From the NCBI GenBank assembly GCA_001179505.1, contig CDMY01000691.1, positions 1 through 30,058 on the forward strand: DNA of 30,058 nucleotides. Direction: 5' to 3'. Every line of letters starts with the position of its first letter. The first letter of the stretch is position 1. The translations under genes were made by a program, and so were the position numbers. Shown in pieces: positions 2,349 to 26,551 of the stretch. This DNA comes from Vitrella brassicaformis CCMP3155. Its lineage: Eukaryota > Protista > Chromerida. The notes under the pieces are model-generated. The model worked only from the letters and a program-made list of their open reading frames with translations. It made no database searches and had not been told where the DNA came from.

Positions 2349-5300
2349 TCAATGCTGCGGTGTCTGCATGTTGCTCCGCGCACTCGGCGAGTCCGCCTCT
2401 CCGGCAGACGACCCCTGCACCGACAGCACCGGGGTCGGCCGCTTCTGTCTCTCGTTGCCTCCGCCCTTCGCACCCGATCCATTGGAGGGCGTCTTGGGCT
2501 GCCCGCTCGACGACTGGCCAAGCGCGTGGCTCAGCACATCCACCTCACTCAGCAGCGGCACAGCAGGCCCGCCACTCTGCTGCAGCGACCGCTTGCCCGC
2601 CTCTTTTCGCTTGTTGGTCGTCGCGCTGCCCCTCACCCGAGGGCCCGACGGCGGGATCATAGCGCGGTTCGCCGGCTCAGACGGCCTGGCAGTGAACAGC
2701 GGGCCGAAGCGGCCGGCTTGCTGGCTCTCTGACGACATGAGCTGGTCTCTGCTCTCAGAAGGCATGTCGGCGTCCTGTGAGGCGGCGCTGGCTGGTGGCC
2801 GTCGTGTGGTAGATGGGGCAGTGGCGAAGAGGGGGATGGTGGAGGGCATCGGGGGAGAGGGCGGGCGCCCCGGCTGCTGCTGCAGCTGCTGTAGGGGGAG
2901 TGTTCGGGTGCTGCTGGCCTGGGTGGCGGCGGCGGCCCCCATTTCTCGCGGTTCCCCTCTCTGTCTCGCTCGCTGATAGTAGTATGAAGTCTCGAGCTCG
3001 TACTCGGTCAGCTTCTCCTTTGTGGCAGCCAAATCGGCCTGCATTCGTTCCACGATAGACGTTTGCAGAGGGGGTGCAATCAATCAGCTGCCCATCGACA
3101 CGTTAAACTTTACCGTGAGCAGTTGGTTTTGCTGTTCGAGTTTGTCGATTTTGTCCTTCCAGTGTGAGGCCAGGCTCTCGGGGTCGAAGCCGCCCATTTC
3201 CATCTCGGCCCTGATGAGGTCCAGCTTGCCTATCGCCTGCTGCTTCAAATACGTCTCGCGCTTCAGAGCCTCCTGCAGACGACGCACTGACACACACCGG
3301 GGGGGGNNNNNNNNNNNNNNNNNNNNNNNNNNNNNNNNNNNNNNNNNNNNNNNNNNNNNNNNNNNNNNNNNNNNNNNNNNNNNNNNNNNNNNNNNNNNNN
3401 NNNNNNNNNNNNNNNNNNNNNNNNNNNNNNNNNNNNNNNNNNNNNNNNNNNNNNNNNNNNNNNNNNNNNNNNNNNNNNNNNNNNNNNNNNNNNNNNNNNN
3501 NNNNNNNNNNNNNNNNNNNNNNNNNNNNNNNNNNNNNNNNNNNNNNNNNNNNNNNNNNNNNNNNNNNNNNNNNNNNNNNNNNNNNNNNNNNNNNNNNNNN
3601 NNNNNNGGGGGGGGGGGGGGGGGCATAGGAAGAGACACCTAGTTCGGATGACTGCAAGCGCCCGTGTTGTGTGTGGTGTGTCGGTGGGTCGGTGGGGTCA
3701 CCAACGTACCTTCCTTTGAGTGTTGTGTGTGTATGGAGGTCTGTTGGTCCTGGTGTGCGGCGGTCTGTCTCTCGAGGTGCTCGAGCCGCGTGTCGCGGTC
3801 GCGGATGGTCAGCAGCAACTTCTCCACATCCAAACCACTCGTCCGGGTCTTCTTCTGCAAAGTCGTCTCCAACTCCTCCAGACGCCTTATCCATATCGCA
3901 CACACGACAGACGTGGATGTCTCACCAACAGTGGAGGGATGGATCGATGGATCTTAAGATGGCTTACTTGGTCTTGGACATTTTCCACTTCTGGAGCTTC
4001 TTGGTCTGCTGCTGCGCCATGTTGACCTGCCCCTTGAGCCGGTCAATGGTGAACTCGCAGGAACTCACGTTCTGCGTGGCCTTGATGAGCTCGCCACGCG
4101 CCGTCTGCTCCCGCGCACGCAGTTCGTGCAGCTGCGCCCACAGAGAGCTGTTGTCCGTCAGAGTCAGCCGCAGCTCGCGGACCTCCTTCTCGAATCGCTC
4201 CCGAGTGGTCAGCAGCCGCCAGGCCTGGAAGGTGCGCAGCTTGAGGTTGACGCTGTGCTGCTCGTGCAGCTGCACCGTACCGTCACAACACGCAGGCAGG
4301 CAGGATACACAGGAGTGTGCTTGTGCTTGTGCTGGTGGGGAATCCTTGTGTGGTGTGTGAGTGTACCTGTTGTCTCATTCTGAGGACCTCGGACTCGTCG
4401 TCTTGTGCCAGTCCCTTCATGAGCTTCTCCGCGCCCGTCATCGGCCGGTCACCGCGATCGACCTCTCTGTCCTTTGCTTCGGTCGCCGCGGCCACTGCAG
4501 CAGTGACCGAGGGAGCTTGAGTGACACGCCGCGATGTGTCCGTCACTGATTGATAGACGTGGATGCACAAATGACGGCCCTCCTGTGTGTGTGTCTGTGT
4601 GTTGTGGCTCACCAGCAAAGCTGGCCTTGTGCATGAGCCTGCCGGAAGCGTGCTGCTGTAGCGAGTCCGCCTCGTCCTCAAGTGCCTTCTGCGCCCTGAG
4701 CAGTGAGGCGGGGTGTCCGATATGGTGTCTGTCGGCCAGGTCGGCCAGCTCCTGCAGCGCCCTCTCCTTGAGCTGCCGCAGGGCCACAACCAGCTCGTGG
4801 TGCAGAGTCTCGCGGTACTCCTGGGACGAATCGATCGTGTGCGCTAGGTCGTTGCGAAGGCCCTGCAGCCAGACAGACACACAGACAGACAGACAGACAT
4901 GGAGAGACAGACAGAGACACAGAAATGGGGAGAGTGTGCGTGGGACCTGCAGTTCTTGCTGGACACTCCTGGTGATTTCGTCTTTGAGTTTTCGTTCGGT
5001 GGTGTGGGCGGCGCTTTGTATGTCGACGATCAGCCGGTGGAGGCGGTCGATCTCAAACACCAACTTGTACCCCTTCTCAGCCACCTCGGCATTCACCTGC
5101 AGTGAGTGCACCACACACTAAGTCGAACGAAACACTGCTGCTTGTCGATCGCCTTGCCTGACTCTCCCTCTCCCTCCCTCCCTCCCTACTAAGTACCTGT
5201 GTGGCGAGCTGTGTCTTGAGGTGTTTGGTCTCGTGGCGGAGAGCGCGTGTCTTGTGCTCTTGGTTCATCAGGCTGGGCAGGCAGGCAGACAGGAAGAGAC

Positions 5301-20507: not shown

Positions 20508-21767
20508 TATCCTGCTAATCGTTCTGGTTGTTGTGTTCTGGGTTCTGTTTAACGAGACTCGTAACCCCGGAGATCCTCTTCTTGGCCAGGTCGCGAGTTT
20601 CTGGCCCGGTGCGGAGGAACGGCACAAGCCCCCGCAGGCATCTGGCCAGTGAGTGCGGTTGAATGACATGATGCTTTTGACACCTGTTAGTGCGTGTGTG
20701 CTGGCATACGCGCAGGGATGGCTGAAAAGGAGGGAGGCATGACCAGGTCTGTAAGTAAGGCAGCTGCACAATTGGTGAGTGAGAGTTAAGTCTGTCTGCC
20801 TGTTTTTCTGTCTGTCTGTCTGTCCGTTTACAAATTCCCCCCAAAGTCTCCCTCCCTCCCGTGGCAGGCAGGCAGGCAGGCAGGGATGTGAATGCCTGCC
20901 TGCTGCTTCCGGTCCCCCCATCGCCCCATATGAATGAAAGTGACACATACACCACACAGACCCGCAGAGAAAGATACACACACCACAAACCGCACTCAAG
21001 GCACACACACATTCAAAGGAGGCAGCTCCGGCACACAGAGTCAGTCAGTCAGTCGTTCACACACACCCACACACCCACACACACGCGCTGGAGCCACACA
21101 CATACACACACACGCGCTCTTCTCCTTCTCTCGTTCTCTCTGTGGGTGCTCTGAGGGGTGGGTCGACGGGCCATATATCGCCCCACAGACGCATCGACAC
21201 ACCGCTCATCTCATCTCATCGCTCATTCACTTCTTCATTCGCTGCACTCTCACTCACACAAGCCTCCACAAAACCAGTGCCAACCGATCCCTCAGACCCA
21301 CCCATCCCCTGTGTGTCTGCCTGTGACGGTCACTGCACTAGGTAACAAAGACAGGCGCCAAGGTGGGAGGGGAGGGGGAGAGGGGAGAGGGGAGAGAGGA
21401 GAGAGGAGAGAGGAATCACACGCGCACACCACAAATCGGCCAGAAATCTCCGCATTCAAATACCCCCCCACCCCAGTCAGTCTGGCAGCTGCCTGGCAGT
21501 GCCAATGCCTGTCTGTCTGTCCCTCACTCGTCAATCCATCCATCCATCCGACCAGCTCATCTCCCAGTGAGTGTGCTGGCGCAAAAATCAGTCAGGCCTC
21601 AGCTTGCCTGACCGTCCACAGCCAGGCAAAGCGACGGAAAAGGCGCTCATACAGAGAGCAGTCGCATGGCATGGTGGCCATGCCGGCAGGCCGGCAGCCA
21701 GGAACTAGGTAGCTCGGTGCGCATAGCCGGCTGGCTGGCTGGCTGCTCTGCTCCTGCAAAATGGATC

Positions 21768-21804
21768 GGTGGATGGATGGATGGATGGAAGGGCCCCCAT
21801 AGGC

Positions 21805-21836
<32 letters not shown>

Positions 21837-21852
21837 ACAAACACACACACAC
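21768..21852. repeat. Compound (GGAT)n and (CA)n microsatellite in the intergenic/3'UTR region
   Basis: Read directly from the sequence. Confidence 0.85.
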
Positions 21853-22084
21853 GCGCAGTCCATCCACAAATTAAGCCCACTCACATCACACTCAGACACA
21901 CACACCCCTCCCCCCCCACACACATGCATCGCACCACCATTCATCACTCACTCACTCACTCACACAACACATGCAGCGTACGCCAACAAATTGCCGTCAT
22001 CGTCTGTCTCATATCATCCCTCTCACCGACCCATACATATCCACGGCCAACACGACACACTCACTCTACAGACCCACGACGCCC

Positions 22085-24471
22085 TCAGTCCTCAGTGTAT
22101 GGCGGCGGCGGAGGCTGTGGCTGTGGTTGTGGCTGTGGCTGCGGCTGTGCGCCCCTCTCGCCCACCCCCTCCGCGTGTGCGCCTTCAGCTTGGCTGTACA
22201 AGGGATATGAGGGATACGAGGCCGCGTCGGGGGCCTGCTGCGCCCGTGGGGGCATGCGCAGGGGGGCTGGGGGCGCGAAGGAACTGTCAGTGGCTGCTCG
22301 GATGTACGTGGGCGGGGGGAGGGGGAGGGGGTAGGGGGAGGCGCCAGGCAACTCCTGCAAAACACCAGACGCAGAAAGAGAGAGGGAGTGAGGGGTGGAC
22401 CCCTGTCTGTCTGTCTGTCTGTGTCTGACCCTTGTTTGAATGGGAGCCCTGTGCGTCTGCACTTCCAGGTATTCGCGATGGTCGCGTATCCTTCGCGCAA
22501 CCGGCAGGGCAAACACCATCTCCCACGGATCATCATAGCCCCAAGACTGCACACCACACACCACACCACAAACAGCACCAGACAAACAGACTGGTTCCAT
22601 GGATGGCCGCATCGATCGCATCTGTGAGCCCCTCAGCCCCCCCAACCCCCCCAGCCCCCCCACCCCCCCACAACACACAACACACAACACACCTCATCTC
22701 TTCGGTCGATGGCGAATGGTCGCGACACGGCCTGTCCCTCGCGATAGTCCCGATTGAGCATCGCCTGCACCGCCTCGCTGAACCGCACCCACTGCCCCTC
22801 ACCCCCGCCGCCGCCGCCGCCCCGTCCCTGCTCCGACCTGTACCACCACACCGCATCTCTCGACGCCCTCCGCTGCGCCAGCGCCTCGCTGATCATCCGC
22901 TGCCGCACCAAACGATGCTCAGACGGATGGGAAGTCAGCTCAATGAACAGCAGACCCACAGCGGCGTAGTCGAAGGCTGCAGACGCCAGCCGGTCAGGCG
23001 AGTATGACGCCGGGGAGGCCGGCAACACCACCTCAGGGACAGGGTTGTGGTCGCCTCTCGGTTGCCGCCTCCTGCCCCTTCTGTGCGGGAGGGGAAGGAG
23101 GGAGATCTCCTCTCTCAGCTGGCCGGGGACGTGTGTGGCTGTGTTTGGTAGGAATGTGGCGGTGCGGTGAGCGGTGGGTGGCTGGGGCAGGGGTGGGAGG
23201 GAGAGGTCGGGGACCAGAGAGCACTGCAGACGGTCGACGGGATGGTGAAGCGTGTAGGGCAGGTCGGGCGGCCACAGAGTCGGGCTGGCCACACACACAC
23301 ACACACACACACACACCACACACACACCGATCCAGCATGTGCGCCCTTCCTCCCTCCCTCCCTCCCTCCCTTGCGACTCACTGGAGTGCGTCCGAGTAGG
23401 AGTGTCTGATCTGGTTCGGGTTGACGAGCAGCTGCAGGGCATACAGCACATACTTGCCGCCCAAAGAGAAGGGCTGCGACGACAGCGACGCCAGCTCCAG
23501 CGACGGACTCGCACACCTCATCCTCCCCGTCACACGCAGCGGGGGCAGCACCTCCCTCCCGATAAGGCTGCCGGGCGCCCTGTCGATGGGCATGCGGATC
23601 TGCTGCCTCCCGTCCTCCTTGCGCCGCACCGGCAGCAAAAGCGACGCCTCGAAGAAGCCGAGAGATGTGGAGAGGCCGCTGTAGACGACGTTGAAGGCGG
23701 CGTAGAGGTCGGGGGGCGGCAGCCGCAGACCGACCCGCGTCCAGCCGGCCGGCAGGCTGTATATGTCACCTGCAGAGCAGAGATGGACAGAGAGAGAGAG
23801 AAGGAGGGGAAGATGTGTCTAATTGGCTGGCGTGTCGGGTGTGTGGTGGCTGTGTGTGTGTTCAAGTCGATGTGCAGGGACGGCACTGTGCCGACCGTTT
23901 CTGAAGAGAACGGGGTCGTCGCCCGCCATGGCCCCTCCCTGGAGCACCCTGTCGCTGTCATCTAGCTCAAACACCTTATTGCCCGAGTGGTTGAAGAACC
24001 TGATATATGTATCATTGACATGACACACAGACCGACAGCCGCATGGCACGTGGGTGGGTGCAGCAGACATGTCCCTCCCTCCCTCCCTCCCTCCCTCCCT
24101 CCCCCACTGCCACTGACTCACCAAGGGTTGGGTGCGATGAAGGTCGATTCCTGCACCTCTTGCAGGATCTTGTCGGCATCGAAGGTTGCCACCTCCCACT
24201 CGCCCGCCCCCTCGCCCCACGCCAGCGCCTCGAACGGCTTGTCAAACGTCGATCGGCAAAAGATGCGCATGTGCTCGTAAAACCGCTGGACGACAGCCTC
24301 CTCAACCCCAGTGGGCCCAGCAGCAGCAGAAGGAGCAGGAGCATGGCCTGGCAGCTGACTCGATGAAGCGGCAGAGGCAGAGGTTGGCAGGGCGGATGCG
24401 CCTGAGGCGGATTGGTTCGTGCCGTGTTGCTGGGCAGGAGGGAGGGGAGGGACTCTGGGACTGTCTTGCAT
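22085..24471 (-). CDS. NEURL4-type ADP-ribosyltransferase-fold protein (apparently catalytically degenerate) with a C-terminal WWE-like domain and a Q/P-rich PPxY tail, ~606 aa
   Basis: Exons 24471-24122, 23999-23896, 23769-23382, 23284-22693, 22546-22430 and 22354-22085 join in frame (1821 nt). Motifs YSLPAGWTRVGLRL / FNVVYSG / ASPSLELA / YALQLLVNP / RLQC / AVGLLFIEL follow the order of the NEURL4-type ART domain as I recall it. VWWY..GQWVRFSEAVQAMLNRDYREG..WEMVF is WWE-like. The 5' end may extend to ATG 24830. Confidence 0.72.
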
Positions 24472-25327
24472 CCATCGTCACTCGGCCTCAGTGCGCATCG
24501 GGCCTTCTCTCCGCCTGTAGGCGGCGGCTGCCCATGGCGGCCCCAGAGCGGCCGTAGACACGCCTAGACGCCTGGATGGAACGTCTACGATGTATGTATG
24601 CCCTCAAGACGCACGCCAACAGAGAAGGAATCTCTGAGAGGTTGGATGGACCAGGGAGCCAAGGACAACACTGAGTTGTATGGATCTGATGCTTTTCTGG
24701 TTATCTGACGTACCTGTGGTTCGTCACGGCCCGTTGCGCGCCCACCTTCTTTCCCCTCCTGCCCGTCGCTGCTTGAGCTTGCAACCCCGCGTGAAACCTG
24801 GGGATGGGCGGTATCTACGTATGGAGTCATGGTGCCTGACGCACGCACGCACGCCGCCTTCAAGCTGCTGCTGGGGTGGCGTGTGTGCGACGCTGTGTGC
24901 CTGCTTGTATGTGGCCGTCGTTCGCAGCGCATTGCATATCCTCCTCTCTGCTGCATCTGCCCTCTGCGTGCTGCGTGTTGCGTGTCCGGGTTGCATGTTA
25001 GGGTGCCTGTTTCATGTTGGACAGACCGACAGGGGACTTGGCCGTCAGGCCACCTAGGGTGCTCCCTGAAACCGCTGCGAATGAACTGCGCGCGAAACCG
25101 CTCTCCTGCAGACCGCTTGAAGCCAAAGAGGCTACACAGCCGTCTGCCCGTCCGCACAAGGCCTTGTGCACCCCAGATCTCTCCTGACATCCCACTGATC
25201 TGCGTCCGGTGCGACCCTTGAGACCCTTCCCCTCTCCCTCCCTCCCTCCCTCCCTGCGCCTCCCCACCCCATCCCCCACCGACGTGTGCATCGCATTGAC
25301 CCGCCCTCGATCCGTCCATCTACCGAA

Positions 25328-26551
25328 ATGAGCGAGATCGCCGTGCTGGGTATGGGGAACCCCCTGCTGGACATCATTGCCGACGTGACGCCCGACTTCC
25401 TGGACTCGTACGGCATCAAGCCCAACAACGCCATCCTGGCGGAGGAGAAGCACCTGCCCATCTACGCCGACATGGACGCCAAGTTCTCCGTCACGTACGT
25501 GGCCGGCGGCGCCACGCTCAACGCCATCCGCGTGTGCCAGGCGCTGCTGGGTCGCCCCAAGGGCACGGCCTACATCGGGTGCATCGGCAAGGACAACTAC
25601 GGCTCGGTCATGAAGGGCATTGCGAGCAAGGAGGGGTTCATCCCGCTGTTCGCCGAGAGCGACAAGAACCCCACGGGCAGCTGTGCGGTGCCGGTGGTGA
25701 GCGGGGAGCGGTCGCTGGTGGCCAACATCGCCGCGGCCAACGACTACCCCATCGACCACCTCAAGTACAAGGTGTGGGAGCAGGTCGAGAAGGCCAAGAT
25801 CTGCTACTCGGCCTCCTTCTTCCTCACCGTCAACCCGCCCGCCATGCTGGCCATGGCCGACCACTGCGCCAAGACCAACAAGCTCTACTGCATGAACCTG
25901 AGCGCGCCCTTCCTGATAGAGTTCTTCAGGGAGCCCATGATGCAGGTCATGCCGTACGTCGACATCCTCTTCGGCAACGAGTCCGAGTGCGCCCACTTCG
26001 GCAAGGTCCACGGCATCGAGACCACCGACAACGTCGCCATCGCCAAGAAGATCGCCGAGATGCCCAAGGTCAACCACAAGCGGCCCCGCATGGTCGTCGT
26101 CACACAGGGCAGCGAGTCGACCATCGTCGCCACACAGTGGAAGGGCGCCGGCGTCAAGGTCACCACCTACCCCGTCGAGCCGCTCGAGCGGTCCAAGCTG
26201 GTCGACACCAATGGGGCGGGGGACGCCTTCGTGGGCGGGTTCCTCTACGGCCTGGCCATCGACAAGGACCTGGACTTCTGCGTCTTCATGGCCCACTACG
26301 CCGCACGGCACGTCATCCAGCGGAGCGGATGCACCTTTGATTTCACTGGTGAGGTACGTATGTGCCCATACACACACACAGCACACACAGCACGGAGAGA
26401 GAGGGGGAGAGAGAGGGGGCGGGTGGATGAAGGGAATACGGGAAATGGGCGCCACCATCCCATTCTCATCTCGTGGTGACACTGTGTGTGTGTGTGTGTG
26501 TGTGGTGGTTGTGTGGTTTTTGTGTGTTGTTCAGATCGCCCAGATCACTAA
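25328..26551 (+). CDS. ADK: Adenosine kinase (PfkB/ribokinase family), 345 aa
   Basis: ATG 25328. Motifs: GMGNPLLDI at the N-terminus, AGGATLN, PTGSCAV, RSLVAN, MNLSAPFL, YVDILFGNESE, and the PfkB signature DTNGAGDAFVGG with the catalytic Asp. Exons 25328-26348 + 26535-26551 give ...GCTFDFTDRPDH*. An alternative donor at 26354 gives a stop at 26576. Confidence 0.95.

What the first reader, a model, noticed from the sequence alone, without database searches (positions are those of the whole stretch)
22085..24122. Pseudo-ADP-ribosyltransferase (NEURL4-type) fused to a WWE-like domain and a PPxY tail: candidate ADP-ribose-to-ubiquitin adaptor
The motifs align in order to the NEURL4 ART domain as I recall it: YALPFGWCRFNL vs YSLPAGWTRVGL, WHMAYHG vs FNVVYSG, LSPSLQYA vs ASPSLELA, AFQVCVRP vs ALQLLVNP, ELEW vs RLQC, and LCALLVRV vs AVGLLFIE. 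All three H-Y-E-type positions appear substituted (H->S, Y->L, E->Q), and a Pro-rich insert of about 70 aa precedes the last strand. Directly downstream (22851-22430) is a WWE-like domain, a family that includes poly(ADP-ribose) binders, and the protein ends QPQPQPQPQPQPPPPPYTED, containing a PPxY WW-domain ligand motif. I do not know of this architecture. It suggests a non-catalytic scaffold coupling ADP-ribosylation signals to NEDD4-type ligases (inference).
Basis: partly seen in the sequence, partly recalled or inferred. Interest (0 to 1): 0.72.

Follow-up and report, generated by a model that had tools for sequence, protein, structure and literature searches.

The report
Degenerate NEURL4-type ART–WWE gene
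This is a real, spliced and transcribed alga gene for a very fast-evolving relative of a PARP-like ("NEURL4-type") ADP-ribosyltransferase family whose nearest relatives also carry a WWE domain. It has lost all three catalytic-site residues, so it is probably a non-enzymatic remnant or scaffold, and the proposed link to NEDD4-type ubiquitin ligases has no support.

Summary
The observation largely holds. A six-exon, 606-codon minus-strand gene (24471-22085, five GT..AG introns) is confirmed by spliced public contigs from two studies.

- **ART-like domain:** exon 3 is significantly homologous to a PARP-like family. It gave a single hit among 1.84 billion proteins (E 3.3e-4), and hhalign gave 96.9 % (E 1.9e-10). 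One member of that family is named "neuralized 4". A folded representative matches only PARP ART domains.
- **Position in the family:** the window protein groups with the five members that carry a WWE domain after the ART domain. ART-then-WWE is therefore an inherited architecture, not a new fusion.
- **Catalytic sites:** family conservation is His 54/54, Tyr 51/54 and Glu 52/52. The window has Ser, Cys and, tentatively, Gln. The terminal branch is about 11 times the median.
- **WWE:** only the N-terminal half is detectable (3 of 1000 shuffles reach its score). Exon 5 shows no similarity, and Pfam WWE does not hit.
- **PPxY:** two motifs exist, but composition alone gives at least one in 37 % of shuffles. 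No WW-plus-HECT locus was found in this genome.

Verdict: a degenerate pseudo-ART with a WWE remnant. The adaptor mechanism is speculation.

The parts
24472..24636 (-). 5'UTR part of exon 1. It holds a short uORF, and an in-frame stop lies two codons before the start. A further 5'UTR intron lies upstream (about 24637-24713).
   Evidence: Spliced contigs X1 and X5 reach 24636, and their loose end continues at 24717.
24122..24471 (-). Exon 1 coding part (ATG at 24471-24469). It encodes 116 codons plus 2 nt. The N-terminal region has no recognised domain.
   Evidence: Pfam was blank.
23896..23999 (-). Exon 2 (104 nt). It leads into the ART-like core.
   Evidence: Junctions 24122/23999 and 23896/23769 appear in spliced contigs. 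Both introns are GT..AG.
23382..23769 (-). Exon 3, the core of the NEURL4-type ART-like domain, running from the Y-x-x-P-x-G-W-x-R motif to the Q-L-L-V-x-P motif.
   Evidence: phmmer gave E 3.3e-4 against 1.84 billion proteins. BLASTP to P0001 gave 3e-14. hhalign to the ART-WWE subfamily gave 96.9 %, E 1.9e-10. The MAFFT alignment is A7.
23678..23680 (-). Ser at the position of the NAD-binding His of the H-Y-E triad.
   Evidence: The family has His in 54 of 54 members. See the alignments, and the coordinates.
23513..23515 (-). Cys at the triad Tyr position, two residues before S-P-S. The next invariant Tyr (23494-23492) is Leu.
   Evidence: The family has Tyr in 51 of 54 and 54 of 54 members at these two positions.
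22693..23284 (-). Exon 4. It contains the W-P..Y..L-Q-C block, an 81-aa Pro-rich insert, the last ART strand, a linker helix region and the N-terminal half of the WWE-like region.
23224..23226 (-). Gln at the inferred position of the catalytic Glu (family motif [IL]-E-W). This assignment is tentative.
   Evidence: The position comes from a gapless extension from the W-P anchor. The block scores 4.7 bits with p 0.015 against the subfamily profile only. The family has Glu in 52 of 52 members.
22972..23214 (-). 81-aa Pro/Leu/Arg-rich insert in the loop before the last ART strand.
   Evidence: Relatives have 5-20 residues in this loop.
22936..22971 (-). Last ART strand (G-L-L-F-I-E, then H-P).
   Evidence: It aligns colinearly in hhalign and HMM comparisons.
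22693..22851 (-). WWE-like region, N-terminal half (W-W-Y ... W-V-R-F ... L-N-R-D-Y), interrupted by a Gly run.
   Evidence: It scores 5.4 bits against the relatives' WWE N-half, reached by 3 of 1000 shuffles. hhalign is colinear with E 0.003. Pfam WWE does not hit.
22430..22546 (-). Exon 5 (39 codons). It sits where the WWE C-terminal half should be, but no sequence similarity is detectable.
   Evidence: p 0.59. No paralogue was found in the genome.
22085..22354 (-). Exon 6 coding part. It is a Pro/Gln-rich, low-complexity tail with the stop at 22087-22085. The 3'UTR continues to at least 21973.
22304..22315 (-). PPxY motif 1 (P-P-T-Y).
22097..22108 (-). PPxY motif 2 (P-P-P-Y), three residues from the C-terminus.
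   Evidence: In 3 % of shuffles a PPxY falls within the last 9 residues.

Best explanation
The locus is a genuine, expressed six-exon gene of a chromerid-type alga. The 72.7 Mb, 1064-contig genome is called Vitrella brassicaformis in other notes of this scan. Its 606-residue product is a highly diverged member of the PARP-like 'NEURL4-type' ART family, within the subclade in which a WWE domain follows the ART domain.

The scaffold motifs of the fold are kept: Y-x-x-P-x-G-W-x-R, S-P-S-x-E, Q-x-x-V-x-P, and the G-hydrophobic last strand followed by H-P. The residues that bind NAD+ and catalyse transfer are replaced (His to Ser, Tyr to Cys, probably Glu to Gln, plus further invariant Tyr, Arg and Thr). 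An 81-aa Pro-rich loop is inserted. Only the first half of the WWE is still recognisable.

- **Shown:** the gene structure, its transcription, its homology, its placement in the family and the loss of the conserved catalytic positions.
- **Inferred:** the protein no longer binds or uses NAD+ and acts, if at all, as a non-catalytic binding module or scaffold. Whether the WWE remnant still reads ADP-ribose is open.
For: - **Gene model:** spliced contigs from two studies carry the junctions (X5 record 5, 2298 nt, all five coding-region junctions; X1 record 4, the three junctions joining exons 1-4). Genomic-type contigs from X8 run through intron 2 unspliced. All introns are GT..AG and the phases give one 606-codon frame.
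- **Homology:** the sole hit of exon 3 among 1.84 billion representatives is P0001 (E 3.3e-4, 40 % identity). BLASTP gives 3e-14 and hhalign gives 96.9 %, E 1.9e-10.
- **Family identity:** 54 members were collected. P0038 is named 'neuralized 4', and P0038 and P0031 pass the Pfam PARP cut-off. The published NEURL4 triad triplets HGS, LLS and ELE (PMC7955679) fit the family motifs. The AF2 model of P0002 (ART part pLDDT mostly 85-96) matches PARP16, PARP4, PARP2, PARP1 and other PARP ART domains in all top 50 Foldseek rows.
- **ART-WWE relatives:** P0002, P0012, P0048 and P0052 hit Pfam WWE at 1.9e-6 to 1.8e-10. In P0001 the WWE continues after an in-frame TAG.
- **Tree:** the window row plus the five ART-WWE rows form a split supported at 96/93. 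The window's end branch is 2.87, against a median of 0.25.
- **Catalytic loss:**
- **Signalling context:** the genome has PARP (7 or more loci) and PARG (10 or more loci) genes, so ADP-ribose signalling exists there.
Against: - The whole spliced protein could not be folded or scanned, so fold retention in this protein itself is not shown. Exon 3 folded alone, with the family alignment, gave pLDDT 53.6 and no meaningful Foldseek match.
- The Glu-to-Gln assignment is weak.
- No orthologue was found, so purifying selection cannot be measured. The very long branch, the low-complexity inserts and the undetectable WWE second half are equally compatible with a gene drifting under relaxed constraint.
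- No bona fide NEURL4 sequence could be fetched for a direct comparison.
Confidence: 0.72

Rival explanations
1. One reading: a non-catalytic adaptor. Its WWE would bind poly- or mono-ADP-ribose, and its C-terminal PPxY motifs would recruit NEDD4-type (WW-HECT) ubiquitin ligases to ADP-ribosylated targets.
For: - The region derives from a WWE.
- Two PPxY motifs are present, one at the extreme C-terminus.
- Two relatives (P0002, P0012) carry an N-terminal Cys/His-rich, RING-like region before ART-WWE (Pfam zf-RING_5 E 0.055, below threshold). A ubiquitin link within this clade is therefore conceivable.
- PARP and PARG genes are present in the genome.
Against: - Pfam WWE does not recognise the region, and the half that carries most ligand contacts in known WWE domains (my knowledge of RNF146) is undetectable.
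- PPxY arises from composition alone in 37.5 % of shuffles.
- No WW hit shares a locus with a HECT hit in this genome. These counts are lower bounds.
- The window protein has no RING-like region.
Confidence: 0.1
2. An expressed but functionally decaying relic. After losing catalysis the gene evolves nearly neutrally, and the domain remnants and the low-complexity Pro, Gly and Gln runs have no specific role.
For: - The end branch is 2.87 against a median of 0.25.
- The protein departs from about half of the family's near-invariant positions.
- It carries a Gly run inside the WWE, an 81-aa insert and a (QP)n tail that coincide with microsatellite-like DNA.
- No orthologue was detectable among 1.84 billion representatives beyond one distant relative.
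Against: - A 606-codon frame is kept open across six exons with correct phases, and the transcript is spliced in two studies.
- The structural, non-catalytic motifs of the fold are selectively kept while the catalytic ones are lost. That is the usual pattern of a pseudo-enzyme under selection.
- A second paralogue (contig C409) has also lost the His yet is intact over three colinear exons.
Confidence: 0.15
3. Still an active ADP-ribosyltransferase that uses a non-canonical active site (Ser/Cys/Gln, or a nearby Asp).
For: - H-Y-[EDQ]-type ARTs tolerate Gln or Asp at the third position (stated for NEURL4-type domains in PMC8932523).
- Asp residues lie near the Gln.
Against: - The His is invariant in 54 of 54 relatives and the Tyr is kept in 51 of 54. 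[quoted passage not shown] Here both are gone, along with three further invariant or near-invariant residues of the pocket.
Confidence: 0.03

Closest known systems
NEURL4 C-terminal ART-like domain (PARP-related, H-Y-[EDQ] class; de Souza & Aravind 2012 as cited in PMC8932523; PMC7955679; PMC10450202)
   Same: The motif order is the same: P-x-G-W-x-R, then the [WY]-x-V-A-Y-H-G-[TS] strand, then S-P-S-x-x-Y-A, Q-V-x-V-x-P, [IL]-E-W, and a hydrophobic last strand. The family found here includes a rotifer protein named 'neuralized 4'. A folded member matches PARP ART domains.
   Different: There are no neuralized (NHR) repeats. The triad positions are Ser, Cys and Gln, where the relatives found here have H-Y-E (human NEURL4 is tabulated as H-L-E). 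A WWE-derived region follows the domain. There is an 81-aa insert.
Uncharacterised ART-WWE proteins P0002, P0012 (RING-like + ART + WWE), P0048, P0052 (EukProt transcripts) and P0001 (metagenome)
   Same: They are the closest relatives by sequence and on the tree. They have the same ART-then-WWE order and share a two-residue deletion after the S-P-S-I-E-Y-A motif.
   Different: They keep His and Glu and an aromatic residue or Leu at the Tyr position. Their WWE passes Pfam. They lack the long insert and the PPxY tail. Two of them have an N-terminal RING-like region, which the window protein lacks.
PARP13/ZAP and other WWE-containing PARPs (PARP7, 11, 12, 14)
   Same: They combine a PARP-type ART domain with WWE. 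In PARP13 the ART domain is inactive (my knowledge; the paper read here says only that some PARP-family proteins may be inactive) and one WWE reads PAR (PMC10450202). This shows that pseudo-ART plus WWE is a known design.
   Different: The domain order is reversed: WWE comes before ART in PARPs. The ART belongs to a different subfamily. No zinc fingers are present. The WWE here is degenerate.
RNF146 / Deltex / TRIP12-HUWE1 (WWE coupled to ubiquitin ligase domains)
   Same: WWE is the known bridge between ADP-ribose and ubiquitylation. The WWE of relative P0002 is nearest to the DTX1 and TRIP12 WWE domains in the PDB.
   Different: The window protein has no RING, HECT or DTC domain. Any ligase link would have to act in trans.

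Membership tests
NEURL4-type / PARP-like ART-like domain family | Significant sequence homology to family members | tested here: met
   phmmer gave E 3.3e-4 in 1.84 billion proteins. BLASTP gave 3e-14. hhalign gave 96.9 %, E 1.9e-10.
NEURL4-type / PARP-like ART-like domain family | Colinear set of family motifs, including the last strand | tested here: met
   See alignment A7. Exon 4 matches the last strand and linker colinearly. The [IL]-E-W block is only weakly matched.
NEURL4-type / PARP-like ART-like domain family | ART (PARP-like) fold | tested here: inconclusive
The family representative P0002 matches only PARP ART domains in all top 50 Foldseek rows. The window's exon 3 folded alone gave pLDDT 53.6 and no match.
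NEURL4-type / PARP-like ART-like domain family | H-Y-E (or H-x-E) catalytic positions | tested here: not met
   The window has Ser, Cys and Gln, against His 54/54, Tyr 51/54 and Glu 52/52 in relatives.
NEURL4-type / PARP-like ART-like domain family | Direct similarity to a bona fide NEURL4 protein (with NHR repeats) | not tested
   No NEURL4 sequence could be obtained by reference. The link rests on the database name of P0038 and on the published triplets HGS, LLS and ELE (PMC7955679). None of the 10 long members scanned has an NHR domain.
PARP catalytic domain (Pfam PF00644) | Pfam model over its gathering score | tested here: not met
   No hit at E up to 1 on any exon. The genome scan with PF00644 did not hit this locus. 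Relatives P0038 and P0031 do pass.
WWE domain (Pfam PF02825) | Pfam model over its gathering score | tested here: not met
   The domain is split by intron 4, so only exon-wise tests were possible.
WWE domain (Pfam PF02825) | Homologous position and similarity to the WWE of the closest relatives | tested here: inconclusive
   The N-terminal half scores 5.4 bits (3 of 1000 shuffles) and is colinear after the last ART strand. The C-terminal half (exon 5) gives p 0.59.
WWE domain (Pfam PF02825) | Binding of iso-ADP-ribose, ADP-ribose or PAR | not testable with these tools
   This needs ITC or a pull-down with the recombinant region.
PPxY ligand of WW domains / NEDD4-type adaptor | PPxY motif present in an accessible region | tested here: met
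   PPTY lies at 22315-22304 and PPPY at 22108-22097, in a low-complexity tail.
PPxY ligand of WW domains / NEDD4-type adaptor | Motif occurrence beyond what composition predicts | tested here: not met
   At least one motif appears in 37.5 % of shuffles and at least two in 6.8 %. No orthologues are available to test conservation.
PPxY ligand of WW domains / NEDD4-type adaptor | WW-HECT (NEDD4-type) ligase encoded in the same genome | tested here: not met
   WW domains occur at 24 or more loci and HECT domains in about 10 genes, with no shared locus. Six-frame scan counts are lower bounds.

The most novel reading that the evidence does not exclude
Chromerid algae keep a dedicated, catalytically dead NEURL4-type ART module. 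The dead NAD+ pocket, the WWE remnant, or both would still read ADP-ribose marks, and the Pro-rich insert and PPxY tail would dock WW or SH3 partners. That would be a trans-acting version of the RING-ART-WWE proteins seen in its relatives.
Probability: 0.12. Interest if true: 0.5.

Novelty: new variant of a known kind. Interest (0 to 1): 0.3.

Why it matters
The NEURL4-type ART domain has no Pfam model and is barely studied outside one human protein. This work shows that it forms a sizeable eukaryotic family, with 54 members collected here from rotifers, euglenid-type and other protist transcriptomes, and metagenomes. One subclade has the recurrent, apparently undescribed order ART then WWE, sometimes preceded by a RING-like region. 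Those intact relatives are the better candidates for linking ADP-ribosylation to ubiquitylation.

The window's own gene is the degenerate end of that clade. It is a useful example of how a pseudo-enzyme arises. It is not evidence for a new signalling mechanism.

Tried and rejected
- Pfam on every exon was blank.
- phmmer of exons 3 and 4 against PDB sequences gave only chance hits.
- An ESM Atlas feature search with exon 3 gave no usable hit.
- Building a two-paralogue profile for the big search was abandoned because MAFFT misplaced the short exon fragments.
- The broad 54-sequence HMM scores exon 3 lower (14 bits) than the subfamily profile, because it rewards exactly the invariant residues this protein has lost.
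- AF2 of exon 3 alone with the family alignment gave pLDDT 53.6, and its Foldseek rows are meaningless.
- The Atlas structure search with the P0002 model gave no named NEURL4 cluster.
- The de Souza & Aravind 2012 paper and the Aravind 2015 review are not held.
- A third word search aimed at true NEURL4 proteins was not run. The length window (at most 1.75 times a 744-aa query) and the lack of shared 5-residue words made success unlikely for its cost.
- All tests were exon by exon.
Full report
**1. The gene**

The window belongs to a 72.7 Mb assembly of 1064 contigs. Other notes of this scan call it Vitrella brassicaformis. I did not verify that name.

Laying public contigs on 21700-24700 gave a 2298-nt contig (run X5, record 5) and a 1520-nt contig (run X1, record 4, from another study) that skip the gaps between those stretches. 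Contigs from X8 run through intron 2 unspliced, so they are genomic.

Reading the junctions gives the following model:

| Feature | Coordinates | Note |
|---|---|---|
| Exon 1 | 24122 up to at least 24636 | ATG at 24471; in-frame stop two codons upstream |
| Exon 2 | 23999-23896 | |
| Exon 3 | 23769-23382 | |
| Exon 4 | 23284-22693 | |
| Exon 5 | 22546-22430 | |
| Exon 6 | 22354 onward | stop at 22087-22085 |

The five introns are 122, 126, 97, 146 and 75 nt long and all are GT..AG. The phases add up to 1818 nt, or 606 codons. The fusion of all parts in one transcript is therefore shown. The refutation 'different splicing breaks the fusion' did not occur.

**2. The ART-like domain**

Pfam has no model for this domain and gave nothing on any exon. 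PMC7955679 likewise lists NEURL4's ART domain as 'Undetected'.

- An exhaustive HMMER search with exon 3 against 1.84 billion representatives returned exactly one protein, P0001 (285 aa, metagenome), at E 3.3e-4 and 40 % identity over query residues 3-121. BLASTP for the pair gives 3e-14.
- Word and profile searches seeded with P0001 collected 54 relatives. They include 'neuralized 4 [Brachionus plicatilis]' (P0038) and several proteins that UniRef names 'PARP catalytic domain-containing'. P0038 and P0031 pass the Pfam PARP cut-off.
- The family profile's weak PDB hits are all ARTs, namely Tpt1/KptA and PARP15, and they centre on the Y-H-G-T strand.
- An AF2 model of P0002 built with the 54-sequence alignment has pLDDT mostly 85-96 over the ART part. 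All 50 of its top Foldseek PDB matches are PARP ART domains; the best is PARP16 6hxs at E 9e-6.
- The published NEURL4 triad triplets HGS, LLS and ELE coincide with the family's Y-H-G-[TS], [x]-Y-x-S-P-S and [IL]-E-W motifs.

I therefore accept 'NEURL4-type, PARP-like ART-like domain'. The caveat is that no real NEURL4 sequence could be compared directly.

**3. Position in the family and catalytic residues**

hhalign of the five ART-WWE members against exon 3 gives 96.9 % probability and E 1.9e-10. A 32-row MAFFT alignment (A7) agrees with it column for column.

In a maximum-likelihood tree the window row and the five ART-WWE rows form a split supported at 96/93. The window's end branch is 2.87 changes per site, against a median of 0.25. 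Placement of such a long branch is never fully safe.

| Position | Family (54 relatives) | Window |
|---|---|---|
| Triad His | 54/54 | Ser, 23680-23678 |
| Triad Tyr | 51/54 (2 Phe, 1 Leu) | Cys, 23515-23513 |
| Triad Glu | 52/52 | Gln, 23226-23224 |

- The Gln position comes from a gapless extension from a W-P..Y anchor. That anchor is only weakly supported (4.7 bits, p 0.015, subfamily profile only). No Glu exists in that 30-residue segment.
- The structural motifs are kept.
- An 81-aa Pro-rich insert sits in a loop that is 5-20 residues long in relatives.
- A paralogue on contig C409 matches the profile in three colinear exons. It has Ala for the His but keeps E-L-E-W.

The pseudo-enzyme reading is therefore well supported by sequence. 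It remains untested biochemically.

**4. The WWE-like region**

All five closest relatives have a WWE after the ART domain.

- P0002, P0012, P0048 and P0052 hit Pfam WWE at E 1.8e-10 to 1.9e-6.
- In P0001 the WWE continues in frame after a TAG codon.
- The WWE of P0002 is nearest to the DTX1 and TRIP12 WWE domains.

In the window, the last ART strand, the linker and the first half of the WWE align colinearly with the relatives. hhalign gives E 0.003 at low probability. The HMM score is 10.7 bits, reached by 0 of 1000 shuffles. The WWE N-half alone scores 5.4 bits, reached by 3 of 1000.

The part that should form the second half, the end of exon 4 plus exon 5, is not distinguishable from shuffled sequence (p 0.42 and 0.59). 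Pfam WWE hits three other places in this genome (on two contigs) but not this one.

The region is therefore a WWE by descent, and a degenerate one. Ligand binding cannot be inferred.

**5. The PPxY tail and the ubiquitin idea**

- Exon 6 is 28 % proline and contains PPTY and a near-terminal PPPY.
- Shuffles of exon 6 give at least one PPxY in 37.5 % of cases, at least two in 6.8 %, and one within the last nine residues in 3 %.
- The genome encodes WW domains at 24 or more loci and HECT domains in about 10 genes. No WW hit lies at a HECT locus, so a NEDD4-type ligase is not evident. These counts are lower bounds.
- Two relatives (P0002, P0012) carry an N-terminal Cys/His-rich, RING-like region. 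It is below the Pfam threshold and was modelled with low confidence. This is the only hint of a ubiquitin link in the clade, and the window protein lacks it.
- PARP (7 or more loci) and PARG (10 or more loci) genes exist in the genome, so ADP-ribose signalling is available.

**6. Comparison with what is known, and verdict**

ART plus WWE is a known pairing in PARP7, 11, 12, 13 and 14, and PARP13 pairs an inactive ART (my knowledge; not stated in the paper read) with a PAR-reading WWE (PMC10450202).

Two things are different here. The ART subfamily is NEURL4-type, and the order is ART then WWE. I found that order in five uncharacterised relatives, and no held paper that mentions both NEURL4 and WWE has it in its title or abstract; I read parts of two of them.

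The window's gene is the most degenerate member of that clade. I rate it a new variant of a known kind, of modest interest. The intact RING-like-ART-WWE relatives are the more promising objects for study.

**7. Limits**

- HHpred-like and AlphaFold tests of the whole protein remain to be done.

Noticed in passing
G000:C409:43.0-44.3 kb (L002 975-1860; L010 1194-2201): A second NEURL4-type ART-like gene in the same genome. It matches the family profile in three colinear exons. It has Ala in place of the invariant His but keeps the E-L-E-W motif. No WWE was detected downstream.
   Followed up: partly
L019 2179-3198 (JGI metagenome contig Ga0498942_028061): In the closest relative, P0001, the ART-WWE reading frame is interrupted by a single in-frame TAG inside the WWE domain. 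This could be a reassigned stop codon, read-through, a sequencing error or a pseudogene. The neighbouring genes encode Sel1 repeats.
   Followed up: no
P0002 residues 46-90; P0012 residues 38-80: Two ART-WWE relatives begin with a Cys/His-rich, RING-like region (Pfam zf-RING_5 E 0.055, AF2 pLDDT below 50). This would make a RING-ART-WWE architecture, which I could not find described.
   Followed up: partly
G000 contigs C718, C298, C406, C238, C424, C385: The PARG catalytic domain (PF05028) hits at least 10 separate loci, six of them on contig C718. This is an unusually large set of poly(ADP-ribose) glycohydrolase genes for a unicellular alga.
   Followed up: no
window 24472-24720: The 5'UTR contains a short upstream ORF (seven codons) ending two codons before the main ATG. 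It also contains a further intron of about 75 nt (roughly 24637-24713), shown by the loose ends of the spliced contigs.
   Followed up: partly
window about 3310-3610: A run of N (an assembly gap) explains the apparent low-GC block at 3001-4000. ORFs across it read as X.
   Followed up: yes
window 25286-26479 (+): A long open stretch whose translation looks like a ribokinase-family or adenosine kinase protein (with a D-T-N-G-A-G-D-A-F motif). It is divergently oriented to the gene studied here. This rests on my reading only; no search was run.
   Followed up: no
window 24072-24103, 23290-23327, 22629-22671, 22100-22149: Microsatellites sit in introns 1, 3 and 4: (TCCC)8, (CA)n and a C-rich 8-9-mer. 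An 18-nt or 6-nt repeat encodes the (QP)n stretch of the C-terminal tail, so part of the low-complexity protein sequence comes from repeat expansion.
   Followed up: partly
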